Positions 37,220 to 60,048 of a DNA stretch of 64,000 bases are shown here, piece after piece; the stretch's first letter is position 1; every line of letters starts with the position of its first letter. Where the stretch lies: positions 148,021 to 212,020 of the IMG/VR virus record IMGVR_UViG_3300020608_000013; one strand, written 5' to 3'. The notes under the pieces were generated by a model, which saw only the letters and a list, made by a program, of their open reading frames with translations, searched no databases and was not told the origin of the DNA. The translations under genes and the position numbers were made by a program.

Positions 37220-37906
37220 TTACATAATATCTAGAACAGAGCCTTTAAAGAGTTCGGTGTTTAACACCTCACCTCCACTAACGTGGAGGTAGCCCAACTT
37301 GTCTAACGGTAGGTCTTTTAAATCGACTTTAAACCCCATTCCTGTAACAGAAAGAAAGTCTAAATGTTTATACCCTTTCAATAAACTGAAGTCTGGTTGA
37401 CTATCGACAGTCAGCATTATATTCAGCGCATCGTCTCTTAACCTGAAGATATTGTTGACAACATTACTACTAACGACCTCGATAGGCGCAATAAGTCCAC
37501 ATGACACCCCTCTAAAAGCTTCATCTGGGATGATAGTAGAGCCTTTTATAATCTCTCCAATTTCACGACGCACACGTACCTCAATACCAGCATCAATGCA
37601 AGCTAGTAAAGGTGCTACGTGTTTCTTGGCAGTACTACCTTCATAGTACACCGTCTTTAAGCCTTTAATGGCTGACAAGTCTTGCGTCTTAATACTACAA
37701 TTCTCAATAACAATACAATTTACGCTACCTGTGATTAGTACATCGTACACGAACCCGTCACCTGTGAATACAAGTGTATCAAGGTCTTGTTTAATAGCAA
37801 TTGGGTTTCTAATGGTGGCATTATTAAAAAATAATACATTTACTTTTACAGAAGAAACCATATTCTGACCAACGACTATTTCTTCAAAATATTTCACATT
37901 TTCCAT
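37220..37906 (-). CDS. LRR-like array protein (228 aa)
   Basis: LSAIKGLKTVYY, FSLLKGYKHLDFLSVTG, CIDAGIEV cap. Confidence 0.7.
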   Translation of the reverse strand: MENVKYFEEIVVGQNMVSSVKVNVLFFNNATIRNPIAIKQDLDTLVFTGDGFVYDVLITGSVNCIVIENCSIKTQDLSAIKGLKTVYYEGSTAKKHVAPLLACIDAGIEVRVRREIGEIIKGSTIIPDEAFRGVSCGLIAPIEVVSSNVVNNIFRLRDDALNIMLTVDSQPDFSLLKGYKHLDFLSVTGMGFKVDLKDLPLDKLGYLHVSGGEVLNTELFKGSVLDIM

Positions 37907-37984
37907 TTCTATTACCTTATATTAAAATTAATAGAAAGGTGGATAACTGACCACCTTTCTATACTAAACAATTAGACTATACCA

Positions 37985-38509
37985 CTACTTACCTTTTTTA
38001 GCCTTGGTCTTTTTACCCACCGATTGTTTGTGCAATCGTGTTGGAATAAAAGCACCCACTGACTTAAAAGTGTACGTCACTTTATTATGTGTTCTAGGGA
38101 GGTCGAGGTTTGACATAAGGCAATGTTGTATTACTGCTTTTCTAGCTTTAACTAACAATGGCTTCTTCGCTATTGAATGCATGGCGGCTATGTTATCAAC
38201 CTTGATCTCTCTATTAAAGACACCATAGTGTTTCAACTGGTAGTGTCTCCCCTCTACAAACTCCCACCCGAAAAAGGACGTAGTCTTGATATACTCGAAG
38301 AGTTGCTTACTCGTGGCGAATACGGGGACTGAACTCACTGATTTTGCACGTTTGTTCAATTTTTTCACAGACCCTTTCGAGGTCAAGTCTGTCAGTGGTG
38401 ATGGTACATACGTGTCCGCTGGCTTCCATTCAAGCCCTACATCTGCCGAGGTATTTAAAGCAGTTACGATAGTTGCAGTGGCTAAGGTATATAGTATTAC
38501 GTTTTTCAT
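37985..38509 (-). CDS. Predicted secreted protein with Sec signal peptide and basic tail (174 aa)
   Basis: MKNVILYTLATATIVTALNTSA-D; ends KKTKAKKGK; similar to 46768..47301. Confidence 0.75.
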   Translation of the reverse strand: MKNVILYTLATATIVTALNTSADVGLEWKPADTYVPSPLTDLTSKGSVKKLNKRAKSVSSVPVFATSKQLFEYIKTTSFFGWEFVEGRHYQLKHYGVFNREIKVDNIAAMHSIAKKPLLVKARKAVIQHCLMSNLDLPRTHNKVTYTFKSVGAFIPTRLHKQSVGKKTKAKKGK

Positions 38510-38606
38510 AAAGTTCCCTTTTAAAAGTTTAGTTTAGTGTAATGGGTGTGTATTTCACCCATTACAAATAGACTCATCTTGCAGTAGATGGTCGTCATGA
38601 TACGCA

Positions 38607-39323
38607 CTATCTTGATCGCATAGTACGCACTTTCGTCATCCCAATATGGTTGATGGCGTTTTCAATACCCGTGGGTAGGTTGACAAGAATAATCTCGTCG
38701 ATTTCTAACGGCTCAATTACATCTAGGAGCGTGGTATGTGAGCCACGCCAATCCTTTATGATTAGACGTTTAAGGGTGGGGAAGTCTTCTAGGTTTAATT
38801 CTAATGAACTTCTTCGGCGTAGTTCTAGTGATAATATACATGCGCGGTCGTCACCTAAATTGTCTAATGGTGCGTTACCACTCATGCGCTCGAAAAAACA
38901 ACAGGGTTCTTCTTCATAAACAACCACACCTTTCACCTTTAGTCTTTTCAGTACTTCCTTATCGTTACATGATAAGGGTTCTTCAAGCCTGTAGTAAGAG
39001 ACTGTCTTCAACGGCAATTCTTCTAGGGAATCGAAATTGTATAGAATACAACCTTCAAAATGGAGGTGTTGTACCTTAGTACCCCATAACCGTCTCAACT
39101 CGACTTCCACGCCTTTAAACTCAAGGTGTGTTACACCTCTCAAATCTACGCCATTCAAGTCGTGGGGTAGGTCTAGAATACGATGGGCAGGATGCGTACC
39201 CATGTCAACCGTAGTCCCATAATATGTATATCCTTCACCATAAGATGTTATTTGAGTCACGCTATCGCCTGTTGCGATAGGTGAGTTTTTTAAATTGCCG
39301 TTTATGTTAATCACATTTGCCAT
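38607..39323 (-). CDS. LRR-like array protein (238 aa) with unusual N-terminal ININGNLKNSPIATGDSVTQ segment
   Basis: VTHLEF, VQHLHFEGC, FPTLKRLII; LKVKGVVV cap. Confidence 0.75.
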   Translation of the reverse strand: MANVININGNLKNSPIATGDSVTQITSYGEGYTYYGTTVDMGTHPAHRILDLPHDLNGVDLRGVTHLEFKGVEVELRRLWGTKVQHLHFEGCILYNFDSLEELPLKTVSYYRLEEPLSCNDKEVLKRLKVKGVVVYEEEPCCFFERMSGNAPLDNLGDDRACILSLELRRRSSLELNLEDFPTLKRLIIKDWRGSHTTLLDVIEPLEIDEIILVNLPTGIENAINHIGMTKVRTMRSR

Positions 39324-39326
39324 TTT

Positions 39327-40061
39327 TTAGTCCTCAATCACTTCTAAGACCACACCTTTACTAGCAAGACGTTTAATCTCTGTTGGTAATGGTACACTTT
39401 GACCTTTAAGTGTAAGATGTCTCAACGTTGTTAGGTTATGTAATAATTCAGGGTGTGGTATATTCCCTTGAATTGTTAAGTGAAATACCTTTGTCTTGGC
39501 GATTTCGTTAATCAAGAAAGGCCAGCCTCCTTCGTAATCGTTGATTACGACCTCTTCCAGGTTTTTATGACGTAGTAAAATCGACCGAACGCCAATGCCA
39601 GGACCTTTCTTTATAATAAACTTCGTTACAAAGCGATCCTCATCATCGCCTAAACCTGTCTTGGGTGAGAAGAACTCTACCCACACACCTCTCTCACGTA
39701 ACGTTGGGATTACGTCATCAATGCGACCGTCAAAGACGACCGAATTAGAGACAATGCCAACAAACCCTAATTTCTTTAGATCGCAAAGTTTGTCAATACT
39801 ACGGATCGTTGCGTTCTCTAGCAGTAATTCAGCTACACTACTATCGTTACATAAGTGACGTAAGTCAAAAGTGTCGTTTCGCAAATGTAATGATCGTACA
39901 TATCGGTCATTTACTTTTTTGAGCACGCTATCATTACCGATAGTGGTTGCTTTACTCAGTAGCTCAACTCTGTCAAGCTTGTTGTTTAAAACTGGGTTTA
40001 ATACCTCCTGTATCTGTACTTTATTATAAAGTTCAACGTTATTGGAATCGATAGTTAACAT
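39327..40061 (-). CDS. LRR-like array protein (244 aa)
   Basis: VRSLHLRN, LHNLTTLRHLTLKG; LRERGVWV and LASKGVVL caps. Confidence 0.8.
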   Translation of the reverse strand: MLTIDSNNVELYNKVQIQEVLNPVLNNKLDRVELLSKATTIGNDSVLKKVNDRYVRSLHLRNDTFDLRHLCNDSSVAELLLENATIRSIDKLCDLKKLGFVGIVSNSVVFDGRIDDVIPTLRERGVWVEFFSPKTGLGDDEDRFVTKFIIKKGPGIGVRSILLRHKNLEEVVINDYEGGWPFLINEIAKTKVFHLTIQGNIPHPELLHNLTTLRHLTLKGQSVPLPTEIKRLASKGVVLEVIED

Positions 40062-40094: not shown

Positions 40095-40133
40095 TATTAG
40101 TGACTAGTTTTTCTAGTCACTAATATAATATAC
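40095..40133 (-). promoter_or_regulatory. Promoter motif (40124-40133) plus 13-bp hairpin (40095-40125)
   Basis: GTATATTATA overlapping TATTAGTGACTAG/CTAGTCACTAATA. Confidence 0.75.
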
Positions 40134-40157: not shown

Positions 40158-41135
40158 TCATGTAGCAGCTACTTCTACGTCTATTTCGCGCTTTCGTAAC
40201 TTCTTCACCGCAGCGCTATTCTTACTATAAGCATCCTTATCTAGTACTAAGGTGTTCAGTCTAGGGAGCTGTGCCAACACATCTAGCTTAAAGTGACGGG
40301 TACGAATGACCTCTAGTCGCCTCAAAGTGGCGGGTAACTTAATACAGTAGACACTTTTAGCAGAATCGATTACTGCTAAATTTTCTAGATTAGTAAAGCG
40401 TTCAAATTTAAGTGGTGTGTCCGTACAGGACACATCTTTAACAGTGAGGTTAATAATATCTTTCTCATGTCGGTACAACCCACTTATGTAGGCACGGCGC
40501 AACGCCTCTAGTATCTCTACGCTAGGTTTATGTTTACCTTTAGTAGAAGGGGCGTATGTATTATACACTTTAGATACGCGATGTTGTCGCCCAGTAGGGG
40601 TGATCACACACGTACCGTCTTGATAGATAGTGTTATAGTTTACACTAAGTGCAGACTTATAGTCGTGCATATAATACTTTGCAATACGATGGTTGCGAGG
40701 TACTGTTTGTTCAAAAGACGCGTCTTCGTAAACCTCAACGCCATTGCTCTCAAGCTCTTTTAAATCATTGGGGTTAATAACACACTTTGTAAAATAAACA
40801 CGCTTTAACCTTTTAAACCGTTTAAGTAAATTACAACTCGGCTCTAATTTAATGTTATTAAAATGGATTACATTAATACCTAACCCTTGAATAGGAAGAC
40901 TATTTAATGATAAAAAGGGGTTAGTGTTTACCCCATTACACTTAACCACACAACCCTCGATGACGAGCCGATTATACCCTTTTAAATTAATATTTTTTAA
41001 AGTAGGTATACATGTAGTTAAGTTTACTTTCTTTATAAGCTTTGATTCTCGATGTGTTAACGAAATTGCTTTTTCCATAATTCTAACTTTATTTTTAATA
41101 AAAAAAAATATTAAGTAGCTGAGACGACTAAACAT
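40158..41135 (-). CDS. LRR-like array protein (up to 325 aa; likely start MEKAIS)
   Basis: FKRLKRVYF, FTNLENLAV, LPATLRRLEV, LPRLNTLVL; two caps. Confidence 0.85.
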   Translation of the reverse strand: MFSRLSYLIFFFIKNKVRIMEKAISLTHRESKLIKKVNLTTCIPTLKNINLKGYNRLVIEGCVVKCNGVNTNPFLSLNSLPIQGLGINVIHFNNIKLEPSCNLLKRFKRLKRVYFTKCVINPNDLKELESNGVEVYEDASFEQTVPRNHRIAKYYMHDYKSALSVNYNTIYQDGTCVITPTGRQHRVSKVYNTYAPSTKGKHKPSVEILEALRRAYISGLYRHEKDIINLTVKDVSCTDTPLKFERFTNLENLAVIDSAKSVYCIKLPATLRRLEVIRTRHFKLDVLAQLPRLNTLVLDKDAYSKNSAAVKKLRKREIDVEVAAT

Positions 41136-41155: not shown

Positions 41156-41968
41156 CTATAGTGCGGTGTTATTCACCACCTCTACATCTTGCGGAAATCT
41201 TACTTTAGGGGGTTTTACAACACTATTCTCTATCTCAATATACTTTAAAGAGCTGGGTGCATCATTGAGATCGACAACGATATTATTGTCTGTCAATGTC
41301 AGAGAGGTTAAGTTTTTAAACACAGATAAGTTAAAAGGTGTGTTCCATCCTTTAACCCCCGCGATTGTTAAAGCTTTAACTAAATGGCCGACTTCCTCAA
41401 ACCCATCGTTAAAACAAAGACCTGTCATCTCATTAACGTGTTCAACCGCTTCTAAGAGAGGAATATCCTTCCCTTCTATAATAGCGGTATCAAGAGTAGT
41501 ACCGTACAGGCATAGCACTCCATTAGTATGGAGTGTATGGATGTGTTCGGATATACAACTGGCGAAGCGAATATTAAATCTCCCATTTACATCTAAGTAG
41601 TGTTGGTGTAAGTCTCTCATCATACGTTCATGATGAATATTAACCTCACATCCCCTTACGAAGGCTTCGATGACTACAGTAGGGAACATTACCCCACTAA
41701 CCACTAGTGTTTTAAGGGAGGTTAGACCCTTCAACCATAATCGAACTTCCTCATATATTAAATGTTGCTCATGTAAATACACGGTCTCAATAGAGTCACA
41801 TTTAATCATTCGGAATATGTGTCCGAAATTCAACTCCATCGGGACGACGATGGCAACCGTTTTAATACCCGTGAGATCAATATCCCCAGGTTCTTTTGGA
41901 AGTTGTGTAATAGTGATGGCGGTAGTGTCGTTCTCTTTTTTAAATATCGGTGTGCGTAGTATGAACAT
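41156..41968 (-). CDS. LRR-like array protein, CxN-GYE subfamily (270 aa)
   Basis: GLCFNDGFE, FKNLTSLTL, APSSLKYIEI. Confidence 0.85.
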   Translation of the reverse strand: MFILRTPIFKKENDTTAITITQLPKEPGDIDLTGIKTVAIVVPMELNFGHIFRMIKCDSIETVYLHEQHLIYEEVRLWLKGLTSLKTLVVSGVMFPTVVIEAFVRGCEVNIHHERMMRDLHQHYLDVNGRFNIRFASCISEHIHTLHTNGVLCLYGTTLDTAIIEGKDIPLLEAVEHVNEMTGLCFNDGFEEVGHLVKALTIAGVKGWNTPFNLSVFKNLTSLTLTDNNIVVDLNDAPSSLKYIEIENSVVKPPKVRFPQDVEVVNNTAL

Positions 41969-42055: not shown

Positions 42056-42883
42056 CTACCACACAATAGGTGGAATTTCTAAGACGTTATCTAATAGTCC
42101 TTCTCTTGGGTGCGTTATTGGGGAACGCTCTACCTCCAAATATCGTAAGCTAGGCGGTATATCATTAATTTCAATTTCTACTTCGTTGCCTATTAAGGTT
42201 AACGAAGTTAGATTAACGAACGGTCTTAAACTAAACGGTGTATTCCAGCACCGAACCCCCACAATGCTTAACCCTAGTACTAAAGGGGCAATTGCCTCGT
42301 ACTTGTCGTTGAGACACACTCCCTCATTAGCGTAAATGAAATGGTGTAGGTTTGTTAGAGATACTCCACTACTTCTCACGACAGCGGTGTCGTTTGTGAC
42401 CCCGCTTAACTCAAACGTACCTGTACGGTAGATTGCAGTCAGATCGTTGCTAACACAACTACCGAATAATGCATCTACACCCACCCCATCTTTTGGGTGT
42501 TTAACCCGTACGAAATGGTTGTGGTAATCAACCGTTTCTCTCGCATAGTGTACGTCCACTCCTTTACTTGTTAACGCACCCACAATACCCCTTTCTAAGC
42601 TACTATTGTCGTGTAATATGAGGGTTTTAAGCACAGGGAGTTTACCTAACCATGTTGAGAGGTTAGTTCGTGTGTTATACTTGCGTATAGTAATCAACTC
42701 TATAGACTGGCAATCATCAACAGGGAAACTTATCAAGTAGTCTATCGGCTCATCAATGTCAATGAAGACGTTACGCACGCCTTTTAGTTCCACGCTCCCA
42801 GGGTACGCTGGGGGCTTTTTCAGAGCTACTGTTGGGAATTTGTTTTCATTTTTGAATATTGGTGTAAATACGTGATGCATCAT
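42056..42883 (-). CDS. LRR-like array protein, close paralogue of 41156..41968 (275 aa)
   Basis: TPIFKNEN, GVCLNDKYE, WNTPF, NLTSLTL. Confidence 0.85.
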   Translation of the reverse strand: MMHHVFTPIFKNENKFPTVALKKPPAYPGSVELKGVRNVFIDIDEPIDYLISFPVDDCQSIELITIRKYNTRTNLSTWLGKLPVLKTLILHDNSSLERGIVGALTSKGVDVHYARETVDYHNHFVRVKHPKDGVGVDALFGSCVSNDLTAIYRTGTFELSGVTNDTAVVRSSGVSLTNLHHFIYANEGVCLNDKYEAIAPLVLGLSIVGVRCWNTPFSLRPFVNLTSLTLIGNEVEIEINDIPPSLRYLEVERSPITHPREGLLDNVLEIPPIVW

Positions 42884-42946: not shown

Positions 42947-42981
42947 GACTATTGTTCTGAATAGCCACTTTTATAATATAT
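42947..42981 (-). promoter_or_regulatory. Promoter motif (42972-42981) plus short hairpin (42947-42966)
   Basis: ATATATTATA; GGCTATT/AATAGTC stem with a G-U pair on the - strand. Confidence 0.65.
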
Positions 42982-43175: not shown

Positions 43176-43955
43176 TTATTCACGTTCTACATTATCGATT
43201 GTAAGCTTGATTTGACAGTTAGTTCTCAAAATCTCTTTCAAAAGCTTTAGTGTCAAACGATTGTCAGTCGGGTTAATTAGGACGATCTCTTCAAGACTAT
43301 CCATGTTAGTGAGGTGTTCAACATCCGTAATGTGAGTTTCCTCAACAATCAGTCTTTCGAGGTTTGGCGGTAGATGCTTCATTGATAACGAGGTATCGCA
43401 GCCCATAATACGCATGTCAACTGCTCGTTTGAACAGCGTCCAATCAGGTTCTACACTAAACCACGAGACACCCGAGACTTCAATTACTAGGACATCGCTA
43501 GCATACTGCTCATACCCCTGGTTATGACAGACGTTATGGAGCATTGGTAATACCTTTTCCAGCTCCTCGTATTTGATTCCCTTGATGTTCAGGTAAGTTT
43601 CCTTATTGTAGTTCTTAAAGACCATTGTACCTTCACCATAAAGTTCGTCGAGGTTACACATGAAGGGTGTTTGTACTTCTAGTGAGTCCCCTTCATTGTT
43701 TTCATACGCGACTTGGTAGCGCTCTTGTTCGTTCGGGAGGAGGGTTGTCACGCCCCGATCTTCAAGTACGGTTAAGTTTTCACTACATAGTTTAACACCG
43801 CCTTTATTGACGTACACTTTTTCCAACGATTGGAACATTTCTAAATCCAGTTCGTTGAAGGTTTCTCCATCTACAAAGAGAACTTCTACTTTAGAGACGT
43901 TAGTGTTAGCCAATTCGTTGCTGTCGTTTACTGCTAATGTAATAATGTCTATGAT
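43176..43955 (-). CDS. LRR-like array protein; ORF track start TTG at 43913, but homology extends to an ATC codon at 43955
   Basis: NVCHNQGYEQYASDV, LPPNLERLIV; upstream in-frame ITLAVNDS aligns with STLAVGES of 44093..44914; AGGA 5 nt before the ATC. Confidence 0.75.
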   Translation of the reverse strand: MIDIITLAVNDSNELANTNVSKVEVLFVDGETFNELDLEMFQSLEKVYVNKGGVKLCSENLTVLEDRGVTTLLPNEQERYQVAYENNEGDSLEVQTPFMCNLDELYGEGTMVFKNYNKETYLNIKGIKYEELEKVLPMLHNVCHNQGYEQYASDVLVIEVSGVSWFSVEPDWTLFKRAVDMRIMGCDTSLSMKHLPPNLERLIVEETHITDVEHLTNMDSLEEIVLINPTDNRLTLKLLKEILRTNCQIKLTIDNVERE

Positions 43956-44092: not shown

Positions 44093-44914
44093 TCAGTTAC
44101 AGCTACCCGTAAAGGTAACTCTCAACTTAGTCTCGCGACCACTCACCCCCTCCAGAAGGGTTATTATATCCAATTTATCGTAATTTGTATCGAAAACAAC
44201 TTCTTCTAGACACGACATGTCTAGAAGGGCTGAAATGTTTATCAACGTTGTGTTTACGACACTAATACGCTTTAGATTTTTCGGAAGTGTCGTGCAATCG
44301 ATGATAAACTCATTATCGATTAAAGATAAATCGTTTGCACGATCAAACAAAGTCCAGTCAATATCACTAGTAAAAGCACTGACCCCTTCAACACGAATTG
44401 AAATCACATCAGGGGCATATTTTTCATACCCTTGATTGTGACATACGCCATTTTGATCTTTCAGTAATGGTGAGAGTTCGTTTGGCGCGATGCCTTCGAC
44501 ACACATTCGTGTTTTGTTCGGGTTATGACCAGTTAACCACATTTCCCCTTCCGCAAAGAGAGAGGCTGTATTTTGAAGGTAGCTTTTCTGAACACTAAAG
44601 TATCCTCCCTCAGGACCTTCATATACTAGTTCATAAAAATCGCTTTCGTTAGATAGCAATATTTTAACACCCCGGTCTCGAAGCTCCTGGACCATCTCTG
44701 TATCCAATACATGACCATTTTGGTCAATATAGATGCGCTTCAAGGCTTTATAGAAGTAGAGATGTAATTCGTTGAAGGTTAGTCCTGATGTAAACAGTAC
44801 CTCTACGCTATCGACGGTTTCGTTTGTTGTGATACAACTCTCGCCTACAGCAAGCGTAGACGTGTTAGTAAAATCCACTTGTGTTAAATCGTTTGAATAG
44901 CGTAATTTAGACAT
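44093..44914 (-). CDS. LRR-like array protein (273 aa)
   Basis: GVCHNQGYEKYAPDV, LPKNLKRISV, LRDRGVKI cap; AGGAG RBS. Confidence 0.85.
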   Translation of the reverse strand: MSKLRYSNDLTQVDFTNTSTLAVGESCITTNETVDSVEVLFTSGLTFNELHLYFYKALKRIYIDQNGHVLDTEMVQELRDRGVKILLSNESDFYELVYEGPEGGYFSVQKSYLQNTASLFAEGEMWLTGHNPNKTRMCVEGIAPNELSPLLKDQNGVCHNQGYEKYAPDVISIRVEGVSAFTSDIDWTLFDRANDLSLIDNEFIIDCTTLPKNLKRISVVNTTLINISALLDMSCLEEVVFDTNYDKLDIITLLEGVSGRETKLRVTFTGSCN

Positions 44915-50091: not shown

Positions 50092-50128
50092 ACGACCACT
50101 TTAATTAGTAGTCGCTTTTATAATATAC
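50092..50128 (-). promoter_or_regulatory. Promoter motif (50119-50128) plus 9-bp hairpin with G-U pairs
   Basis: GTATATTATA; GCGACTACT/AGTGGTCGT on the - strand. Confidence 0.7.
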
Positions 50129-51007: not shown

Positions 51008-51011
51008 AGTA

Positions 51012-52918: not shown

Positions 52919-52931
52919 ATTTTACTCCTTT

Positions 52932-53789
52932 TTACGCTCGTAATAATTTCTGATCTTTAACGACCAGTTCTGTCAAATTGTGTATTTTCCCAATATCGGG
53001 AAAACCGACAACATACCCACCATAAACATGCAGACGCTGAATACTGAAACCTTCCAACAAACTGAGGTCTAATGTTGTTTTCAAATCGATTAAATGTAAC
53101 TCACCGATAGTTATCAACTCTAGCGCTAGTAATTCCTTGCGCTTATAGAGGCTACAATTTTTAATCGTTAAGGACTGAATGTGTTCTTCATTCATTAACT
53201 TTACCAGCGATAAATGGTCTACATCTTTAACAATATAGCTACCATCTTTTACCTTATTCGCATTATCAATATAGTGCGGCTTAACATGCCTATCGCAACG
53301 AATTGTTTCGTGAAATATATCGGGTAGGTCTTTGTAATGTACCTGATGCATTGGGCTATATTGATCGAGATCACTCATAGCGCAAGGGACGATAGATACG
53401 TTTTTACGTATCAAACTATCGTAGCAGTCTCGTTTAACATCACGACCATCCTTTTCAAGTACACAACCTTTCAATAAAATAGCTTCACTGATATTAAGGT
53501 GTGCGAACCTACTGGTTGGTACAATAGTGGTGTCAGATATATCCAGTATACCGATCTTAATGCCCGTGAATGGGCAATCATCAAGGACTAACTGAGTTGC
53601 TATTTTCATACGATCTACAATAGCTGGTCTCCCGTCACCGAAATCGATATATGCTAAATCTACCGTAAAGCAAGGCATCTCTATACCTGCACCACTAAAA
53701 CTTTCCAGCGGTCGACGATCTCTCAAATACGTCATTAATTGCATTAAGGTCGCAGTGTTTAAGTTGTAAGTTACTTTTACTAAATCCAT
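52932..53789 (-). CDS. LRR-like array protein (285 aa)
   Basis: IQSLTIKNC, IGELHLIDL, IQRLHVYG, IHNLTELVV. Confidence 0.8.
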   Translation of the reverse strand: MDLVKVTYNLNTATLMQLMTYLRDRRPLESFSGAGIEMPCFTVDLAYIDFGDGRPAIVDRMKIATQLVLDDCPFTGIKIGILDISDTTIVPTSRFAHLNISEAILLKGCVLEKDGRDVKRDCYDSLIRKNVSIVPCAMSDLDQYSPMHQVHYKDLPDIFHETIRCDRHVKPHYIDNANKVKDGSYIVKDVDHLSLVKLMNEEHIQSLTIKNCSLYKRKELLALELITIGELHLIDLKTTLDLSLLEGFSIQRLHVYGGYVVGFPDIGKIHNLTELVVKDQKLLRA

Positions 53790-53807
53790 GACTATCTCCT
53801 ATATGAG

Positions 53808-54173
53808 TCATTTATTAGAATTGTTGAACACTAGTAAGCGCTCGATATTAAAAAAACGATGTAACGATTCACCGTTTATAAATTCACAATTATCGAACAC
53901 AATATCCTTAGCGATACCTGTAGGTAACTGTGAAACATCCACCGTACATCGATAAAACCGTAGTTGGCGAATCGCGCACTTCTTTAAATGATGAAACTCT
54001 TCATAGTTCGGAAGCGTGTGCTTAAACACTAGCGTGCGGCTAGCTGCCGTTACCTCAACCCCTTCTAGTGTCATGCCGACACTATTATAGAAGATTAAGA
54101 ATTGAATTTTCTCATAACTTCTTTCCCTCCACGACACGTACTCATTAGTTTTAAACGTTAGAACCTTCCCCAT
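53808..54173 (-). CDS. Short single-module LRR-like protein (121 aa)
   Basis: IRQLRFYRC, FFNIERLLV. Confidence 0.65.
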   Translation of the reverse strand: MGKVLTFKTNEYVSWRERSYEKIQFLIFYNSVGMTLEGVEVTAASRTLVFKHTLPNYEEFHHLKKCAIRQLRFYRCTVDVSQLPTGIAKDIVFDNCEFINGESLHRFFNIERLLVFNNSNK

Positions 54174-55351
54174 TACTTATCCTCCTTTTCCACAGTTACA
54201 ATCGTAGGTACATTTTTCACGTTGATAGCAACCACTCCACCAACTTTTAAAGTGTGGGTGTTACCAGAACCTCTAAACGTAACGTTGTTTAACATTAACA
54301 CGCGTTTCTCCAAACTTTTAGAAAGTAGCGTTTCAATAGGCACTTCAACGTTAGAATAGAGTAAATACGACATACCGTTATTAGTAGTTCCTTCGACACC
54401 CATAATAGAACTATACTCGTCTACACCCTCAAGTCCGTAAAGGGCAACAATGAAACAGAATTGCATCCAACTATCATGGGTTTCTACGTTGTTTAGGACG
54501 ATCTCACTGAACTTTCTCTTCTTCAGCACCTCCCTTATAGAAAAGGGTGCTAGTACACATCGATTCAATGTCAAGCTTGCTACATTACACCAGTTTTCAA
54601 GGACTATAGGTTCAAGAATGTCTTCCAGAGTAACTTCCACATTATCGAGATTATGGGTGTTAAATAATTGCTGTGCGTTCTTAATAGTAACTCGCTCTAC
54701 TTCAGGGAAGTATGTTAACCCGTACATACAGATTATTTTGCTAAAATCCACCGTTACGTCTTTAGGTGGGATACCATTATAATCTAAAGTCTTCACAAGG
54801 TGAGAGGCTATTGAACTAACACCCTCTCTAAGTTTTGATTTGTAGGCGTAATATTCACCAAATCTAGTTCCCGTTGTGAGGACATCCTCTCCGCTCAAAT
54901 AGTCGTTGTATTGTATGAGGTAGGTGTAGTGGTCGCTTTCTAACGACTCCATAGGTGAGAACGGGAAGCGCGGTTTCTTCCGAATAAAGTCGTTAACACT
55001 ACCGTAATAGATAGTAACAGGAGGTCTCTCTACATTTAGTAATTTACGGACATCTGTTAACTCCACCATCTTACTTGTAATGAACACTTTCTTGACGTTA
55101 TTGAACGTCAAGAATTGTAAGTTTGTGACTTCGGTGTCATAGAAATCAACCACATCTATATCGACACTAGGGCTAATTTGACTTACATCAAACGGCTTTT
55201 CCAACCCTCTCATGAGAAGGTACTTAATTTTCACTCCCTTTCCTTTATCAAGACGACTGTTGACTAAAGAACCTCGTTTGAAAGCTACTACATCGTATGT
55301 AGTATTGTCTTTAATTTCGTCGATTACTTGGACAGGTCTATTCTCTTTCAT
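54173..55351 (-). CDS. LRR-like array protein (392 aa)
   Basis: IKYLLMRGL, FPEVERVTI, VASLTLNRC. Confidence 0.75.
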   Translation of the reverse strand: MKENRPVQVIDEIKDNTTYDVVAFKRGSLVNSRLDKGKGVKIKYLLMRGLEKPFDVSQISPSVDIDVVDFYDTEVTNLQFLTFNNVKKVFITSKMVELTDVRKLLNVERPPVTIYYGSVNDFIRKKPRFPFSPMESLESDHYTYLIQYNDYLSGEDVLTTGTRFGEYYAYKSKLREGVSSIASHLVKTLDYNGIPPKDVTVDFSKIICMYGLTYFPEVERVTIKNAQQLFNTHNLDNVEVTLEDILEPIVLENWCNVASLTLNRCVLAPFSIREVLKKRKFSEIVLNNVETHDSWMQFCFIVALYGLEGVDEYSSIMGVEGTTNNGMSYLLYSNVEVPIETLLSKSLEKRVLMLNNVTFRGSGNTHTLKVGGVVAINVKNVPTIVTVEKEDK

Positions 55352-55354: not shown

Positions 55355-56260
55355 CTACACTCCTGTATATAAATCACTGCTTGTTAAATTTGGTTCATAA
55401 TAATCTACACTCCATCTTAACTCATTCTCAAGACCTGAGTTATTAGTATCGCGGTTAACGATACTATCAAGATAGTCTGCCAAATCATCAAAATTCTCAT
55501 CATCTCTAAAAATAATAACGCCTTGACCGTTAAGTCTATTTAAGAATTTTCGATGTTTGTTAAAATACGACAACTCCACATCGACTTGATGTAGATGGGG
55601 TAGTGTGAGTAACGCTTCCTCGCTTTTTAATGACGCGTTGCTTAAATAAAGGTATTCGACACTTGGTCCTATATACGAACAATCAAACGGCGCTGGATTA
55701 TCGCAAATTGCGAGCATTTGTAGATTAGGAAGCCTACTAATAAAACTAACCTCAGTCATATCAGTTTCCCATAACCATAGGGTCGAAATAGCTTCTAATA
55801 TAATGTGATCATTATCAATGCCATATAGCGAATGGGCAAAAACCGATTCTTCTAACCAGAAATCTTCGTTACTCAACGCGTCTATCACGCTACCGCGTAG
55901 CGCCTTTGGGTACTTAAACACATACTGAGCGATACCAATAACATCACAGTGTGTTCTTATAGTATCAGGCACTTCCCCATCTTTATGAACAATTAGGCGT
56001 TTTAAATCTGGGGCGACCTTTGGTAGTGCGTCTATATTACGCCAAGTGGCGTTACTTATATTCAATACCCGCACACCCGTCAAGTCAAGTTTTTCTAAAT
56101 CGATGAAATTCTCATAACACACTGTTAGTATGCTAACAGTGTCTATGCCAACAGCGTCAATCCAACCGATGTCGTCATTATCCTCAATAATAAATTCAAC
56201 ATTATTTTTACGGGCTTTGTTTTTCAAAAAACGAGCATTAACTCTATCTACTTTGTACAT
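55355..56260 (-). CDS. LRR-like array protein (301 aa)
   Basis: LTGVRVLNISN, LPNLQMLAICDN, VEYLYLSN, LPHLHQVDV. Confidence 0.85.
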   Translation of the reverse strand: MYKVDRVNARFLKNKARKNNVEFIIEDNDDIGWIDAVGIDTVSILTVCYENFIDLEKLDLTGVRVLNISNATWRNIDALPKVAPDLKRLIVHKDGEVPDTIRTHCDVIGIAQYVFKYPKALRGSVIDALSNEDFWLEESVFAHSLYGIDNDHIILEAISTLWLWETDMTEVSFISRLPNLQMLAICDNPAPFDCSYIGPSVEYLYLSNASLKSEEALLTLPHLHQVDVELSYFNKHRKFLNRLNGQGVIIFRDDENFDDLADYLDSIVNRDTNNSGLENELRWSVDYYEPNLTSSDLYTGV

Positions 56261-56282: not shown

Positions 56283-56320
56283 TAAAGTTGAGTCGTTTTT
56301 GACTCAACTTTATAATATAT
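56283..56320 (-). promoter_or_regulatory. Promoter motif (56311-56320) plus 12-bp hairpin (56283-56312)
   Basis: ATATATTATA overlapping TAAAGTTGAGTC/GACTCAACTTTA. Confidence 0.75.
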
Positions 56321-57371: not shown

Positions 57372-57806
57372 TTAACGCCAACGTTCCCCACTACTGTCGA
57401 AGACATCAATGTCCCGACTATGTAGTTTATCAAATAAAGCGTAATGTTGCTCTAATGCTTTATTTGGCACTTGGACACTTTTTAAGCTTTTCATCGCTTT
57501 AAGCGCCGAGTAGTTTTTAACTACACCAACATCATCTTTAATAATAACTACTTCACAGTTTGGCGGTAGCCCATTTAAGCACTCGAAGACAGGTGAATTG
57601 CTTATATAGATATAAGCAACCTTAGTAAAGTTTAGCAATGTTTTATGTGCGGTGAAGCGCGAAACATTATGGATGGTTAAGCCGTAAAGAAGGTCTATAA
57701 GCTTGTTAAGTCCCTCTGTATTACAGGTAGAGGGTGTGGTACTTAAACTTTCTCCTCTAAGCGTTAAGTACCCTCTCGTGCATAGTTCACCATAGTTATA
57801 ACTCAT
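57372..57806 (-). CDS. Single-module (C-terminal half) LRR-like protein (144 aa)
   Basis: FTKVAYIYISN, MKSLKSVQV; LHSRDIDV cap. Confidence 0.7.
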   Translation of the reverse strand: MSYNYGELCTRGYLTLRGESLSTTPSTCNTEGLNKLIDLLYGLTIHNVSRFTAHKTLLNFTKVAYIYISNSPVFECLNGLPPNCEVVIIKDDVGVVKNYSALKAMKSLKSVQVPNKALEQHYALFDKLHSRDIDVFDSSGERWR

Positions 57807-58441
57807 ACACTACCCCCAAACTCCATACCGCTTTCGGACACAAGTTTAATAAGCACAATTTGCTCTTTCATAAACTCTGTACCAATGACCTCCATTTCAT
57901 GCGGCGATGTCCCTCGGAGGTAGTGGTCTACGAAGCGCTTATTGCAAGCCATTATACTTTCTGATGGTGGACTACTAAGTAAATGTTTTGTAATAAGTCG
58001 GTGGGTAATAGTATACCCAGCCATATGTCTCAGCAAGTCTCGTATACTGGCTAGGTGCGTAGTCTCTAGGTTGTTCGCTACATGTTTAGCAATTTCACCC
58101 AAGTAGAACCTTGTAGCCATATCTTTGAAATGACTTGGTTCGTATTCCACAACAGAGAACCCATTAACAAATCTCTCTAGTTTATATGCCAACATAGGAT
58201 CAGTGGGGAGGTATTCTAATTTCTCCTCAAGCGGAATACGATTTTTGTTAGATATTACGACACCCTTACTTTTCAGTAGGTGTTTCGCTTTAGCGGTATC
58301 GTAAAGAACCATTAAGTCTACAAAACGCTCACGAGAGCTTTGTAGCATGTGTGCTCCCTGATAAATGTGCATCAAACGAACACATTCTTTTGTGTAAACT
58401 AACGAAGTATCGGTATCGAATAACATGTCTTTAATACTCAT
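57803..58441 (-). CDS. Hypothetical protein (212 aa)
   Basis: ORF track; ATGA overlaps. Confidence 0.8.
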   Translation of the reverse strand: MSIKDMLFDTDTSLVYTKECVRLMHIYQGAHMLQSSRERFVDLMVLYDTAKAKHLLKSKGVVISNKNRIPLEEKLEYLPTDPMLAYKLERFVNGFSVVEYEPSHFKDMATRFYLGEIAKHVANNLETTHLASIRDLLRHMAGYTITHRLITKHLLSSPPSESIMACNKRFVDHYLRGTSPHEMEVIGTEFMKEQIVLIKLVSESGMEFGGSV

Positions 58442-58647
58442 ACTACATCACCCATAACGAAAACTTTATCAAAAATGTGATTTACTCGATCCCAAACGAG
58501 CGGTTTTAGGGGTCTTTTGGGGTCAATTGTTAGAAACAACGTGTTACCCGTCTGTTTTAACAGTTTCGATTCTAGTACAGTTTCCACTGCGTCACTGCGT
58601 AAACGCCACTGCGATTTCTTATTTTTTAATACCATAATTACCTCCAA
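58438..58647 (-). CDS. Hypothetical protein (69 aa)
   Basis: ORF track. Confidence 0.65.
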   Translation of the reverse strand: MEVIMVLKNKKSQWRLRSDAVETVLESKLLKQTGNTLFLTIDPKRPLKPLVWDRVNHIFDKVFVMGDVV

Positions 58648-59213
58648 TTTAAAATAACTTCATCAATTAAAAGTTTGATTTTTAGATACGTTTGTTTTTG
58701 TTCAGTAAACAACTTATCATGGCGTTGATCTACAGACTTTACCTTTGCCATCAGGTTAGTCGCTTTGTTGAAGATAACACCTTCTTGTGCTCTTGCCGCT
58801 GGACAATTTTTGACTTCAATCAACTTCCTTAGTTTTTTAAGCTGGTTGATTAGATTGTCTACTTGTTTTGACACTTTTTTTAGAGTGTGAAAAACTTTCA
58901 CACGCTCGTCTACAATGCCATTGTAGCGATGGACTTCGCCCTCCAATGTGTCAAGACGATCTAGACGTTCTATCATACACTGACGCAGTTTGTCATTGAG
59001 TTGTAAACTCGCATCTGCGTTTACCGTACGTCGCCTTTCCAACAACTTGCGTATATTACGTGTGTAGTAATCCCTACGACGTATTGTCGTAGAGCGAAGT
59101 ATGTGTAGCGCATCCATTGCTTGTTCAAGTACTATACTTTCCATTTTCCAATCCAAAGGTAAATTACCGATACCATAAAAAATCACCACCGACACGTCTG
59201 GCAAAGACCTCAA
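58638..59213 (-). CDS. Basic coiled-coil protein (likely start MESIVL)
   Basis: K/R-rich heptad pattern. Confidence 0.7.
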   Translation of the reverse strand: MRSLPDVSVVIFYGIGNLPLDWKMESIVLEQAMDALHILRSTTIRRRDYYTRNIRKLLERRRTVNADASLQLNDKLRQCMIERLDRLDTLEGEVHRYNGIVDERVKVFHTLKKVSKQVDNLINQLKKLRKLIEVKNCPAARAQEGVIFNKATNLMAKVKSVDQRHDKLFTEQKQTYLKIKLLIDEVILNWR

Positions 59214-60048
59214 TACCCTTCGCTTTAAGGTCAGATAGCGTCTCTAAAAAAGTTCCATCCATAGTAGTCACATCATCGACAATGACCCTTTTCAGAACTT
59301 TACTGTATAACAACGCTTCATGGTTTATAACGGTCGCTGAAGTGATAACAAGTCGCGATACGTTTGTTATATATGGTCTGGATAAATCATACACCTTCGC
59401 ACCAAAACCAATCGTTGTAGAATGCAGCTTTAAATCATGTAAGTGTGATTCGTTCAACATCCTATCAACCCCTGTTAGAAATAAGTGTCGAAAATCATGT
59501 ATCTTCTTCACGTTTGTGAAGTCACAATAGCGACGTTTCGTGAACAACGCATCATATTTCAAATGTTTATCCGTGACATCGGCCAATACACTTGTTAACC
59601 GCCCTTGATCTAAAGACCACCCGCCATCAACCTTATCACGATCTTGTATATCGAGGATAAGTGGGTGGTCGCCTATCAATGGGTGTGTGTATTCTTCAAA
59701 GGGTTTTGACACTTTTACCCTGTTTTCAATACAATACTCTACTAGAGTATCTAGCTCGCTAATAGAGGTTATCCTGGGGTGTATTATAGACACTGCTTCT
59801 AATGAGGGGTTGTGGAGTAGTTCTACGCCCTTTTTTAGGTTGAAGCAGGGTGAATCCCTAATATAAAGATACCTTATCTTTTTACCTACCAGGAATGTAA
59901 GGTCGATCGGTGTATTGTTACCGATAAACCTTAATGTTTTGAATTTAATAGGCAGGTGATACAACTCTCTGGGAGTGTAGAATATCCCCTTATCAATCCT
60001 AGCTTCCGCAATATCCCAATCATGGGGTATTGAGTAATTTGTCATCAT
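59164..60048 (-). CDS. LRR-like array protein (294 aa)
   Basis: IRYLYIRDS, NPSLEAVSI, VSRLVITS; LKAKGIEV cap. Confidence 0.8.
   Translation of the reverse strand: MMTNYSIPHDWDIAEARIDKGIFYTPRELYHLPIKFKTLRFIGNNTPIDLTFLVGKKIRYLYIRDSPCFNLKKGVELLHNPSLEAVSIIHPRITSISELDTLVEYCIENRVKVSKPFEEYTHPLIGDHPLILDIQDRDKVDGGWSLDQGRLTSVLADVTDKHLKYDALFTKRRYCDFTNVKKIHDFRHLFLTGVDRMLNESHLHDLKLHSTTIGFGAKVYDLSRPYITNVSRLVITSATVINHEALLYSKVLKRVIVDDVTTMDGTFLETLSDLKAKGIEVFARRVGGDFLWYR

What the first reader, a model, noticed from the sequence alone, without database searches (positions are those of the whole stretch)
37220..60048. ~23 kb tandem array of 23 divergent LRR-like genes in a jumbo-phage early region
Seen: 23 co-oriented genes of 121-392 aa carry LxxLxxLxL-type strands (FKNLTSLTL, LPNLQMLAI, LPKLKVLRV) and (L/I)PxxLxxL repeats. 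There is no recognisable catalytic or TIR/NACHT domain. They fall into subfamilies: CxNxGYExYA group at 41.1-50.1 kb, the 51012/52007 pair, and the 38607/39327/50153 group. Amino-acid motifs are conserved but no long exact DNA repeats were seen, which suggests an old, repeated expansion. Known: LRR solenoids are variable protein-binding scaffolds; large repeat-gene expansions are characteristic of eukaryotic giant viruses (FNIP/ANK repeats) and I do not know of a comparable array in phages. Inference: a phage-encoded repertoire of binders, i.e. an accordion-like arsenal that inhibits or decoys host defence or regulatory proteins, expressed early from at least five promoter motifs inside the array. 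This is the best candidate for an undescribed system.
Basis: partly seen in the sequence, partly recalled or inferred. Interest (0 to 1): 0.88.

Follow-up and report, generated by a model that had tools for sequence, protein, structure and literature searches.

The report
Phage array of divergent LRR genes
An uncultivated 212-kb jumbo phage gives about a tenth of its genome to some twenty very divergent, tandemly duplicated leucine-rich-repeat proteins with no enzymatic domain; they are most likely early-made binders of host proteins, and I found no comparable array in the phage resources searched.

Summary
The observation largely holds. Eleven form a firm paralogous family (BLASTP E 1e-5 to 1e-52). 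Four more join by profile, five are probable, and three (52932, 53808, 54173) cannot be shown to belong. One extra member lies outside the array at 27462-28262.

A profile of the core family hits only this phage's own proteins full-length among 1.84 billion representatives. Beyond those it hits true LRR proteins (E down to 1e-22), and in the PDB it hits only LRR chains.

AlphaFold (pLDDT 87) shows two short LRR modules of about five strands each, flanking a family-specific middle subdomain. It is not one long solenoid.

No DNA repeats remain and the closest paralogues are mostly neighbours, so the array arose by old tandem duplication, not as a recent "accordion".

A strand-specific, strictly intergenic motif, TATATTATA followed by a hairpin, heads operons in and around the array. 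[quoted passage not shown] A 99%-identical variant contig lacks three array genes, which suggests they are dispensable. I rate this a new variant of a known kind, of moderate to high interest.

The parts
40158..41135 (-). Core family member. The likely true start is the ATG at 41078 (306 aa). Basic, pI 9.8.
   Evidence: BLASTP network; HMM; JGI gene call of 306 aa; pI.
41156..41968 (-). Core family member. Sister of 42056. Its C-terminal module is shortened.
   Evidence: BLASTP E 1e-44 to g42056; tree support 99/99; module alignment.
42056..42883 (-). Core family member, first gene after promoter-like motif 42980.
43176..43913 (-). Core family member. TTG start. Lacks about 30 N-terminal residues compared with its sister 44093.
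   Evidence: BLASTP E 9e-52 to g44093; alignment A1.
44093..44914 (-). Core family member, and the protein that was modelled: two LRR modules (residues 4-87 and 172-269) and a middle subdomain (94-154).
   Evidence: AlphaFold pLDDT 87.2, pTM 0.84; Foldseek best matches are LRR proteins but weak.
44982..45782 (-). Core family member. Sister of 45864.
   Evidence: BLASTP E 2e-29; tree support 98/96.
45864..46676 (-). Core family member.
47357..48259 (-). Core family member.
48302..49201 (-). Core family member.
49207..50067 (-). Core family member, first gene after promoter-like motif 50127. Frameshifted in the variant contig L003.
56456..57283 (-). Core family member, the most divergent of the core.
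55355..56260 (-). Family member by profile, and the only one that passes a Pfam LRR gathering score. First gene after motif 56319. Has an acidic C-terminal tail.
   Evidence: LRR_4 at 36.1 bits against a cutoff of 27; hhalign 95.5% against the core profile, which did not include it.
57372..57806 (-). Single-module member (144 aa), equivalent to the C-terminal module.
   Evidence: HMM E 4e-12; hhalign 96.7% against the core profile.
59164..60048 (-). Divergent family member at the upstream edge of the array.
   Evidence: HMM E 2e-5, then recruited on iteration; C-module hit.
39327..40061 (-). Divergent family member, first gene after motif 40132.
   Evidence: Recruited in the last HMM round at E 2.4e-4; module hit at residues 47-132.
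37220..37906 (-). Probable family member, last gene of the array.
   Evidence: HMM E 2.8e-6; hhalign E 8e-4 against a non-array background of 0.027 or worse.
38607..39323 (-). Probable family member, paired with 50153.
   Evidence: BLASTP E 1.4e-5 to g50153; HMM E 5.9e-6; hhalign E 1e-3.
50153..50932 (-). Probable family member. The likely start is the ATG at 50908 (251 aa).
   Evidence: BLASTP to g38607; hhalign E 8e-5; 251-aa gene calls in L002 and L003.
51012..51941 (-). Probable family member, paired with 52007. Absent from variant L003.
   Evidence: BLASTP E 8e-14 to g52007; hhalign E 1.7e-4; deletion.
52007..52918 (-). Probable family member. Absent from variant L003.
   Evidence: HMM E 4.5e-8; hhalign E 8e-4; deletion.
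52932..53789 (-). Candidate only. LRR-like strands can be seen by eye, but the statistics are borderline. Truncated to 63 aa in variant L003.
   Evidence: Module HMM E 0.02; hhalign E 0.012.
53808..54173 (-). Candidate only (121 aa). Membership not demonstrable.
   Evidence: hhalign E 0.049, within background.
54173..55351 (-). Candidate only (392 aa). Membership not demonstrable. Residues 198-287 are modelled with strands every 19-24 residues.
   Evidence: AlphaFold pLDDT 54.5 overall, 70-85 for residues about 200-290; Foldseek not significant; hhalign in background.
27462..28262 (-). Family member outside the array (266 aa). Sister of g40158.
   Evidence: HMM E 7e-6; hhalign 78% against the core profile; tree support 99/93.
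56311..56319 (-). Promoter-like motif TATATTATA followed by a hairpin, 51 nt before the g55355 start.
50119..50127 (-). Promoter-like motif plus hairpin, 52 nt before the g49207 start.
42972..42980 (-). Promoter-like motif plus hairpin, 89 nt before the g42056 start.
40124..40132 (-). Promoter-like motif plus hairpin, 63 nt before the g39327 start.
62836..62844 (-). Promoter-like motif plus hairpin upstream of g62289. Probable start of the transcript that enters the array from the high-coordinate side.
37985..38509 (-). Interspersed non-LRR gene with a signal peptide and a Lys-rich tail (pI 10.2).
   Evidence: Translation; pI; weak paralogy to g46768.
46768..47301 (-). Interspersed non-LRR gene with a signal peptide and a Lys-rich tail (pI 9.9).

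Best explanation
What it is. The region holds a family of about 20 paralogous proteins found only in this phage lineage. They are small (144-325 aa), have no enzymatic domain and are probably cytoplasmic. The family grew by repeated local tandem duplication in an uncultivated 212-kb jumbo phage and then diverged almost to saturation.

Architecture. A typical member has two short leucine-rich-repeat modules of about five parallel strands spaced 16-27 residues apart. Each module ends in a helix and a final strand (the motif L..L...GV.V). Between the two modules sits a family-specific subdomain that carries the CxNxGYE motif.

Expression (inferred). The genes lie in four to six short operons. Each operon is headed by a phage-specific AT-rich motif (TATATTATA) followed by a hairpin, and most genes are separated by stable hairpins. 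This is the layout of jumbo-phage early, host-takeover regions.

Most likely function (inferred). The proteins are made early in the cytoplasm. Each uses the variable exposed face of its LRR strands to bind a different host protein, either a defence or a housekeeping factor, and blocks, sequesters or redirects it. On this reading the family is a repertoire of binders, not a set of enzymes.

Shown: paralogy, LRR type, two-module architecture, tandem origin, absence from other sequenced phages, and the promoter-like motif.
Inferred: timing, location, and the identity and nature of the targets.
For: Paralogy. BLASTP network E 1e-5 to 1e-52. The iterated HMM converges on 19 proteins, with no hit among 650 shuffled decoys and no recruit among the other ~110 window ORFs. 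hhalign ranks the array proteins above every non-array ORF.

LRR type. The core profile hits 900 library proteins at E<=0.001. The best non-self hits (E down to 1e-22) are LRR_4/LRR_8/LRR_14/FNIP proteins, and both halves of the profile take part. All 23 PDB sequence hits are LRR proteins. g55355 passes the Pfam LRR_4 threshold.

Fold. AlphaFold pLDDT 87.2 with periodic strands in both modules. Foldseek top matches are mostly LRR, plus FNIP in the viral library.

Variable face. Strand positions alternate between conserved hydrophobic residues (mean entropy 1.70 bits) and variable exposed residues (2.61 bits; all columns 2.24). pI ranges from 4.5 to 9.8 across members.

No other domains. No signal peptide or TM segment in the LRR members. 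No catalytic or defence-domain hit in Pfam, PHROGs, PADLOC or NCBIfam.

Tandem origin. Three of the four well-supported sister pairs are physical neighbours. No DNA repeats remain.

Expression signals. Twelve of the 14 TATATTATA/T sites in the window are on the gene strand. All 12 are intergenic (P about 6e-13) and lie 36-89 nt upstream of a start codon, with one at 167 nt. This matches the ~10-nt AT-rich early-promoter motifs described for RNAP-encoding jumbo phages (PMC7598289, PMC8244752). Sigma-70-like sites are not enriched. Hairpins of -14 to -29 kcal/mol occupy nearly every gap of 55 nt or more.

Context. A Macro-domain gene lies 1.4 kb downstream.

Dispensability. A 99%-identical variant contig lacks 52007 and 51012, truncates 52932 and frameshifts 49207.
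Against: There are no expression, localisation or interaction data, the host is unknown and the phage is uncultivated.

'Early' rests on analogy. I could not verify that this phage encodes virion or non-virion RNA polymerases, because those genes, if present, lie outside the window.

Foldseek matches are weak (best E 0.016 in PDB, 0.0035 in BFVD; TM 0.35 or less), so the overall shape is not a classical LRR horseshoe.

Only one member passes a curated LRR threshold on its own.

Three of the 23 genes cannot be tied to the family.

No relatives exist in other phages, so conservation and selection cannot be measured.

High variability of exposed positions is expected for any old paralogue set and does not prove diversifying selection.

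The deletion variant rests on one 1.7-kb assembled contig.
Confidence: 0.5

Rival explanations
1. The LRR proteins are virion-associated host-recognition or ejected proteins. Examples would be decorations of a fibre network, or internal head proteins delivered with the DNA. They would be made late.
For: Tandem paralogous families of virion and ejection proteins are reported for the phiKZ-related giant phage SPN3US (PMC5694885). In the chimallivirus Goslar a paralogous set of DUF7941 fibre proteins includes members with LRR/beta-helix domains, proposed to recognise the host (bioRxiv 10.64898/2026.04.21.720040). The window does encode a phiKZ-type virion protein at 7782-9176.
Against: The array proteins are small and start directly with LRR strands. 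They have no N-terminal docking or fibre module, and Pfam and PHROGs give no structural-protein hit. The block that holds the recognisable virion gene (5111-9176) has no TATATTATA motif directly upstream, whereas the array operons do. The array is more than 28 kb from that gene.
Confidence: 0.15
2. The proteins bind the phage's own components rather than host proteins. They might act as assembly chaperones, as adaptors that sort proteins into a phage compartment, or as regulators of phage enzymes.
For: LRR modules are generic protein-binding scaffolds. The window is full of other lineage-specific paralogue pairs, so duplication here is not limited to host-interaction genes. Each operon also carries non-LRR genes that could be partners (37985, 46768, 57803, 58638).
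Against: Roughly twenty members that differ in charge and in their exposed face are more than a housekeeping role would need. A near-identical variant appears to lose three of them, which fits accessory functions better than core ones. No relative of the family exists in any other phage.
Confidence: 0.17
3. The array is largely evolutionary debris. A once-useful gene was duplicated many times by recombination between promoter/hairpin cassettes, and most copies are now drifting with little function.
For: Terminal branches are extremely long (median 1.65 substitutions per site). One member lacks its N-terminus and uses a TTG start (43176). One is a single module (57372). Two have shortened C-modules (41156, 42056). 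The variant shows a frameshift, a 7:2 nonsynonymous-to-synonymous ratio in g49207 and a three-gene deletion. The repeated promoter-plus-hairpin cassettes recall the PeSL cassettes that mediate shuffling in T4-type phages (my own recollection of Arbiol et al. 2010; not checked here).
Against: All of these 121-392-aa ORFs are intact in the reference genome despite saturating divergence, which is not expected without purifying selection. The hydrophobic framework positions are conserved. Start codons, ribosome-binding sites and hairpins are kept between genes. Three independent assemblies are 99.98-100% identical over 13-21 kb.
Confidence: 0.1
4. The LRR resemblance is a compositional artefact of Leu/Ile/Asn-rich sequence from an AT-rich genome, and the genes are not a true LRR family.
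For: Only one of 24 proteins passes a curated Pfam LRR threshold. Foldseek E-values are all above 1e-3.
Against: The other ORFs of the same genome, with the same composition, do not match the profile, and shuffled decoys give nothing. Profile hits to true LRR proteins reach E 1e-22 over 1.84 billion sequences. All 23 PDB hits are LRR proteins. The confident model has the expected 16-27-residue strand periodicity.
Confidence: 0.03

Closest known systems
LRR/FNIP repeat multigene families of eukaryotic giant viruses and entomopoxviruses (Klosneuvirinae and mimivirus 'leucine-rich repeat protein' and 'FNIP repeat' families; the entomopoxvirus 'leucine rich repeat gene family')
   Same: Both are virus-encoded, lineage-specific expansions of many small repeat proteins with no enzymatic domain. 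These families are the best structural matches in the viral structure library. Both use a recurring 'LP.SL..L'-type repeat.
   Different: Those viruses infect eukaryotes, and their proteins are often fused to F-box domains that hijack ubiquitin ligases. Here the host is a bacterium, no F-box or other adaptor domain is present, each protein has only two five-strand modules plus a unique middle subdomain, and no window protein hits the Pfam FNIP model.
Poxvirus 'genomic accordions' (transient tandem amplification of a host-range gene under selection; own knowledge of Elde et al. 2012)
   Same: Tandem duplication of a putative host-interaction gene in a large dsDNA virus. Gene content appears to vary between near-identical genomes.
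   Different: Accordions are recent, near-identical copies that expand and collapse quickly. Here identity is 38% or less, no DNA repeats remain and branches are saturated. This is an old, fixed family.
Early host-takeover regions of large lytic phages (phiKZ early operons transcribed by the virion RNA polymerase; also the SPO1 host-takeover module and the T4 hyperplastic regions with promoter/stem-loop cassettes, both from my own knowledge)
   Same: A co-oriented block of small ORFan genes, a short conserved AT-rich promoter motif repeated in front of short operons, and hairpins between genes (PMC7598289, PMC8244752).
   Different: As far as I know, those regions hold many unrelated small genes, not about 20 members of one repeat-protein family. 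Expression timing is measured for them and only inferred here.
Bacterial LRR-only proteins and LRR effectors (Leptospira LIC LRR proteins, internalin domains, LRR-type secreted effectors)
   Same: These are the closest sequence-profile matches in the PDB (E 2e-10 to 1e-3). They are non-enzymatic binding domains built from repeats of about 22 residues.
   Different: Those are secreted or surface proteins with one continuous solenoid of 6-20 repeats. The phage proteins have no secretion signal, only about five repeats per module, and two modules per protein.
Chimalliviridae DUF7941 fibre proteins with C-terminal LRR/beta-helix domains (Goslar gp86, gp92, gp161)
   Same: A paralogous family in a jumbo phage, some of whose members carry LRR-like domains.
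   Different: Those are virion fibre proteins defined by an N-terminal DUF7941 module. The array proteins have no such module and no structural-protein match.

Membership tests
Leucine-rich repeat superfamily | Tandem repeats of 20-30 residues with a conserved LxxLxLxx(N/C)-type segment, detectable by LRR profiles. | tested here: met
   The core-family profile hits LRR_4/LRR_8/LRR_14 proteins at E down to 1e-22, and only LRR chains in the PDB. g55355 passes the LRR_4 gathering score. The C-module consensus shows four or five such units. Met for the 11 core and 4-5 profile-linked members; not shown for 52932, 53808 and 54173.
Leucine-rich repeat superfamily | Each individual protein passes a curated Pfam LRR threshold. 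| tested here: not met
   Only 1 of 24 passes; 5 of 24 match LRR_4 at E<=1.
Leucine-rich repeat superfamily | A solenoid fold with one parallel beta-strand per repeat forming a continuous sheet. | tested here: inconclusive
   The AlphaFold model (pLDDT 87) has strands spaced 16-27 residues apart in two blocks of five. Foldseek top hits are mostly LRR proteins, but E is 0.0035 or worse and TM 0.35 or less. I could not inspect the model coordinates.
FNIP / IP22 repeat family (Pfam PF05725) | A match to the FNIP repeat model. | tested here: not met
   No window protein hits FNIP at E<=1. The resemblance is limited to the LP.SL..L motif and to Foldseek neighbours.
Genomic accordion (recent tandem amplification) | Near-identical tandem copies with DNA-level repeats. 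| tested here: not met
   No direct repeat longer than 49 nt at 60-71% identity; the only recurring DNA is the promoter motif. Best paralogue identity is 38%.
Genomic accordion (recent tandem amplification) | Copy-number differences between closely related genomes. | tested here: inconclusive
   One 1,666-nt contig at about 99% identity joins window 53618 to 50909, which removes or truncates three genes. Three other assemblies are collinear. This is a single short contig and could be chimeric.
Jumbo-phage early (virion-RNAP) transcription units | [quoted passage not shown] | tested here: met
   TATATTATA occurs at 12 sites on the gene strand. All are intergenic and lie 36-167 nt before a start codon. 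The definition is taken from PMC7598289.
Jumbo-phage early (virion-RNAP) transcription units | The phage encodes multisubunit virion and non-virion RNA polymerases. | not testable with these tools
   None were found among the window ORFs scanned.
Jumbo-phage early (virion-RNAP) transcription units | Transcripts appear early in infection. | not testable with these tools
   The phage is uncultivated and no expression data exist.
Chimalliviridae DUF7941 fibre proteins | An N-terminal DUF7941 module. | tested here: inconclusive
   No Pfam hit of any kind at the N-termini. I could not confirm that the Pfam copy used contains DUF7941.
Known anti-phage defence proteins (PADLOC) | A match to a defence-system model (TIR, STAND and others). 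| tested here: not met
   One weak ThsB hit (E 0.0049) among 24 proteins, not significant after multiple testing and not in the ten divergent members rescanned.

The most novel reading that the evidence does not exclude
A bacteriophage carries its own diversified 'recognition repertoire'. [quoted passage not shown] This would be a virus-side counterpart of the LRR-based receptor families of cellular immunity, and the first multigene repeat-protein counter-defence arsenal described in a phage.
Probability: 0.25. Interest if true: 0.85.

Novelty: new variant of a known kind. Interest (0 to 1): 0.62.

Why it matters
LRR proteins are a common way for cells to build variable binding surfaces. Large repeat-protein families are known from giant viruses of eukaryotes, but the phage resources and literature searched here gave none. 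This phage spends about 20 kb, roughly 10% of its genome, on such a family.

If the proteins are early host-protein binders, they would be a new class of phage counter-defence or takeover factors. They would also be a compact natural library of two-module LRR scaffolds with unknown bacterial targets, and each target could point to a defence or essential pathway.

The finding also shows that a phage can build and keep a multigene family by tandem duplication, a mode of genome growth usually discussed for giant eukaryotic viruses.

Even on the more conservative readings (virion or assembly roles), the family is an architecture not previously described: LRR module, CxNxGYE subdomain, LRR module. 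It has no full-length relative among 1.84 billion representative proteins.

Tried and rejected
- **Nucleotide searches** of the array against GenBank phages, near and distant: no match.
- **tblastn** of g44093 and g55355 against phages, at E up to 0.01 and 1: no match. tblastn of the 861-aa ORF: no match.
- **PHROGs** on ten array proteins: no family.
With single proteins it returned only the source contig.
- **Word-indexed searches** of 5.8 billion proteins with g44093, with the flanking 565-aa gene and with A1: self hits only. Synteny in related phages therefore could not be examined.
- **PADLOC and NCBIfam**: nothing significant. The single weak ThsB hit (E 0.0049 among 24 proteins) could not be located in the ten divergent members and I treat it as noise.
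- **AlphaFold of the unlinked 392-aa gene 54173** with the mixed alignment: low confidence (pLDDT 54.5), and its Foldseek search was not significant. Membership of 54173, 53808 and 52932 stays open.
- **tRNA and Rfam scans** of the window: nothing.
- **Sigma-70 promoter scan**: no enrichment (66 found, 61.6 expected). I therefore do not assign host-type promoters.
- **Internal duplication of the two modules**: only weakly supported (hhalign E 4e-4, probability 34%). I report it as possible, not shown.
- **Literature searches** for LRR arrays or paralogous repeat families in phages: no precedent found. Only single LRR-annotated tail or surface proteins and the Goslar DUF7941 proteins turned up.

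Full report
**Where the window comes from.** The window is the last 64 kb of a 212,020-nt IMG/VR viral contig, IMGVR_UViG_3300020608_000013 (window position = contig position minus 148,020). Its final 141 nt are identical to the first 141 nt of the contig, so the assembly closes on itself and is probably a complete genome. The same sequence (99.98-100% identity) occurs in a second JGI sample and in one SRA run. It is a phage. The ORF at 7782-9176 matches PHROG virion and tail families (E 3e-41) and is about 32% identical to virion proteins of phiKZ-like jumbo phages of Burkholderia, Ralstonia, Xanthomonas, Pseudomonas and Erwinia. Almost everything else is dark matter: most large ORFs have no Pfam or PHROG match, and the 565-aa gene next to the array has no relative but itself among 5.8 billion proteins. 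GC content is uniform at 0.34-0.41, so the array is not compositionally foreign.

**The observation.** Between 37,220 and 60,048 all plausible genes are on the minus strand. There are 27 of them. The quoted peptide strands are present.

**Which genes are family members.**
- All-against-all BLASTP gives a firm network of eleven genes at E 1e-5 to 1e-52: 40158, 41156, 42056, 43176, 44093, 44982, 45864, 47357, 48302, 49207 and 56456. It also gives the pairs 51012/52007 (8e-14) and 38607/50153 (1.4e-5).
- An iterated HMM over all 130 window ORFs converges on 19 proteins. It adds 57372, 55355, 37220, 59164, 52007, 38607 and 39327, and also a gene outside the array at 27462-28262. No other window ORF is recruited and none of 650 shuffled decoys hits.
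- In hhalign, every array candidate outranks every non-array ORF except 53808 and 54173, which fall in the background. 52932 is borderline.
- My count is 15 firm, 5 probable and 3 undemonstrated in the array, plus one firm member outside it.

**Are they LRR proteins?** One at a time, the evidence is weak. Only g55355 passes a curated Pfam LRR threshold (LRR_4, 36.1 bits) and only 5 of 24 match LRR_4 at E<=1. As a family, the answer is clearly yes.
- A profile of the eleven core members was searched against 1.84 billion representative proteins. At E<1e-30 it finds only this phage's own proteins. Next come long multi-repeat proteins (E 1e-22 to 1e-7) that Pfam calls LRR_4, LRR_8, LRR_14, LRR_EndoS or FNIP. 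Both halves of the profile (positions about 10-100 and 180-280) take part.
- Against PDB sequences, all 23 hits are LRR proteins: Leptospira LIC proteins at 2e-10, designed LRRs, internalins, U2A', RSU1 and decorin.
- AlphaFold of g44093 with the family alignment is confident (pLDDT 87.2, pTM 0.84). It shows five strands spaced 16-24 residues apart in residues 4-87, then a beta-beta-alpha-beta-beta-alpha subdomain (94-154) that carries the family-specific CxNxGYE motif, then five more strands spaced 21-27 residues apart in residues 172-269.
- Each module ends in a helix and a strand that correspond to the recurrent motif L..L...GV.V.
- Foldseek places LRR proteins (NRC resistosomes, internalins, SDS22) among the top matches in the PDB. 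In the viral library the top matches are the LRR/FNIP families of giant viruses and entomopoxviruses. E-values are weak (0.016 and 0.0035) and TM-scores are 0.35 or less, as expected if the protein is two short modules and not one horseshoe. No phage structure was among the matches.
- The two modules resemble each other only weakly (hhalign E 4e-4).
- The model of the unlinked 392-aa protein 54173 was poor (pLDDT 54.5). Its best part, residues 198-287, again has strands every 19-24 residues. Its fold search was not significant.

**Evolution.** No direct DNA repeats survive apart from the promoter motif. The best paralogue identity is 38%, and terminal branches of the tree have a median of 1.65 substitutions per site. 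Three of the four well-supported sister pairs are physical neighbours: 41156+42056, 43176+44093 and 44982+45864. The fourth joins 40158 to the out-of-array copy 27462. The family therefore grew by local tandem duplication long ago, with at least one dispersal. It is not a recent accordion. Other paralogue pairs elsewhere in the window show that duplication is common in this genome. Within the strands, conserved hydrophobic positions (mean entropy 1.70 bits) alternate with variable exposed ones (2.61 bits; all columns 2.24). Members range from pI 4.5 to 9.8. This fits a conserved scaffold with diversified surfaces.

**Variation between genomes.** A 1,666-nt contig from another run (L003, about 99% identity) joins window 53618 directly to 50909. 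That truncates 52932 and removes 52007 and 51012. The contig also has a 1-nt deletion in g49207 and seven nonsynonymous against two synonymous changes there. If real, some members are dispensable and gene content is in flux. It is one short assembled contig and needs read-level confirmation.

**Expression signals.** Reading the intergenic regions on the gene strand shows a recurring TATATTATA motif, usually preceded by C/G-R and an AT-rich stretch and, at 11 of the 12 sites, followed at once by a perfect stem-loop.
- Twelve of the 14 copies of TATATTAT(A/T) in the window are on the minus strand. All twelve are intergenic, although only 9.5% of the window is intergenic (P about 6e-13).
- Eleven of them lie 36-89 nt before the next start codon.
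- Four exact copies lie inside the array (56319, 50127, 42980, 40132). Two degenerate copies lie upstream of g44982 and g43176. Further copies at 62844 and 63521 lie upstream of the array, and one at 37126 lies just downstream.
- Sigma-70-like sites are not enriched.
- Nearly every intergenic gap of 55 nt or more contains a 10-16-bp hairpin of -14 to -29 kcal/mol, against a coding control of -11.1 ± 3.0.

A review of jumbo-phage RNA polymerases states that in each RNAP-encoding jumbo phage a highly conserved AT-rich motif of about 10 nt, centred near -10, can be found upstream of presumed early operons, and that it proved to be the early promoter wherever it was tested (PMC7598289). phiKZ early promoters fit this description (PMC8244752). 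The motif here fits it too. The block that holds the only recognisable virion gene (5111-9176) has no copy directly upstream. I therefore consider early expression likely. It remains an inference, because I could not read the rest of the genome to see whether such polymerases are encoded.

**Mechanism.** The proteins have no signal peptide, no membrane segment and no catalytic or nucleotide-binding domain. They consist of binding scaffolds with diversified exposed faces. They sit in what looks like an early, host-takeover-type region beside a Macro-domain gene (35339-35788, Pfam E 1e-15), and at least some appear dispensable. The best-supported reading is a repertoire of cytoplasmic binders made early, each aimed at a different host protein. 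Whether the targets are defence systems or housekeeping machinery cannot be told. I give this reading a probability of about 0.5. The rivals are:
- virion or host-recognition proteins, on the precedent of the Goslar DUF7941 fibres with LRR domains. Small size, the lack of any docking module and the promoter class count against it.
- binders of the phage's own proteins.
- a decaying family with little current function. The uniformly intact ORFs and the conserved framework count against this.
- a compositional artefact, which the controls exclude.

**Comparison with known systems.** The closest analogues in logic are the LRR/FNIP/ankyrin multigene families of giant eukaryotic viruses and entomopoxviruses. 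The closest in genome organisation are early host-takeover regions of large lytic phages. The closest in sequence are bacterial LRR-only proteins. The array is not a member of the FNIP family (no Pfam match), not a strict genomic accordion (no recent copies), and not a DUF7941-type fibre family (no such module detected). No phage in GenBank, no PHROG and no paper I could find describes a comparable array.

**Verdict.** It is a new variant of a known kind: a virus-encoded repeat-protein multigene family, here in a bacteriophage and with a new two-module architecture. The proposed counter-defence role is plausible but untested.

Noticed in passing
window 35339-35788 (-): A Macro-domain protein (149 aa, Pfam PF01661, E 1e-15) lies 1.4 kb downstream of the array in the same co-oriented block. 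It may be an ADP-ribose-processing enzyme, and so a counter-defence candidate in its own right.
   Followed up: partly
window 37985-38509 (-) and 46768-47301 (-): Two ~175-aa proteins are embedded in the LRR array. Each has an N-terminal signal peptide, pI of about 10 and a Lys-rich C-terminal tail. They are weakly similar to each other (BLASTP E 0.006 over 123 residues), have no family match and their role is unknown.
   Followed up: partly
window 56334-56441 (-): An unannotated 35-aa ORF has a signal peptide and a lipobox-like LTSC motif, so it is a possible small lipoprotein. It sits between g56456 and the promoter-like motif at 56319.
   Followed up: no
L003:1-1666 (Logan ERR15087792) against window 49567-53945: A variant contig at about 99% identity joins window 53618 directly to 50909, a 2.7-kb deletion that truncates g52932 and removes g52007 and g51012. 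It also carries a 1-nt deletion at codon 100 of g49207. It is a single short contig and could be an assembly chimera.
   Followed up: partly
window 63860-64000 and L007:1-141: The last 141 nt of the window are identical to the first 141 nt of the 212,020-nt source contig. This terminal direct repeat indicates a closed, probably complete genome. The gene that runs off the window end continues at the contig start.
   Followed up: yes
window minus strand: 63521, 62844, 56319, 50127, 42980, 40132, 37126, 23597, 22586, 17985, 15279, 4928: There are twelve strictly intergenic, strand-specific copies of TATATTATA, eleven of them followed by a non-conserved perfect hairpin. They are spread over the whole window, not just the array. 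I read them as a phage-specific promoter class. Why a hairpin directly follows the motif is unexplained (a 5' stabiliser, or part of the promoter?).
   Followed up: partly
window 27462-28262 (-): One more member of the LRR family (266 aa) lies 9 kb outside the array. It is sister to g40158 in the tree (support 99/93).
   Followed up: yes
window 14409-16904, 16886-21532, 60305-61574, 31510-32623, 21619-24902 (all -): Other tandem or nearby paralogue pairs with no known family: 14409/15765 (E 1e-37), 16886/18947 (8e-14), 60305/60999 (2e-12), 31510/32111 (9e-4) and 21619/23640 (4e-4). Gene duplication is pervasive in this genome region.
   Followed up: no
P0014 and P0020 (external hits of the family profile): Two of the best non-self matches are not plain LRR proteins. 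One is a 1,021-aa protein with an nSTAND1 NTPase domain. The other is a 782-aa protein whose N-terminus looks TIR-like by eye (no Pfam hit). Both carry LP.SL..L-type repeats. This is a lead, not evidence, that the phage repeats resemble the sensor arms of bacterial NLR-like proteins.
   Followed up: no
window 43914-44092 and 43176-43913 (-): g43176 starts with TTG and lacks about 30 N-terminal residues that its sister g44093 has. The 179-nt upstream gap carries only a degenerate promoter motif (TATATCATA). This may be a partly eroded copy.
   Followed up: no
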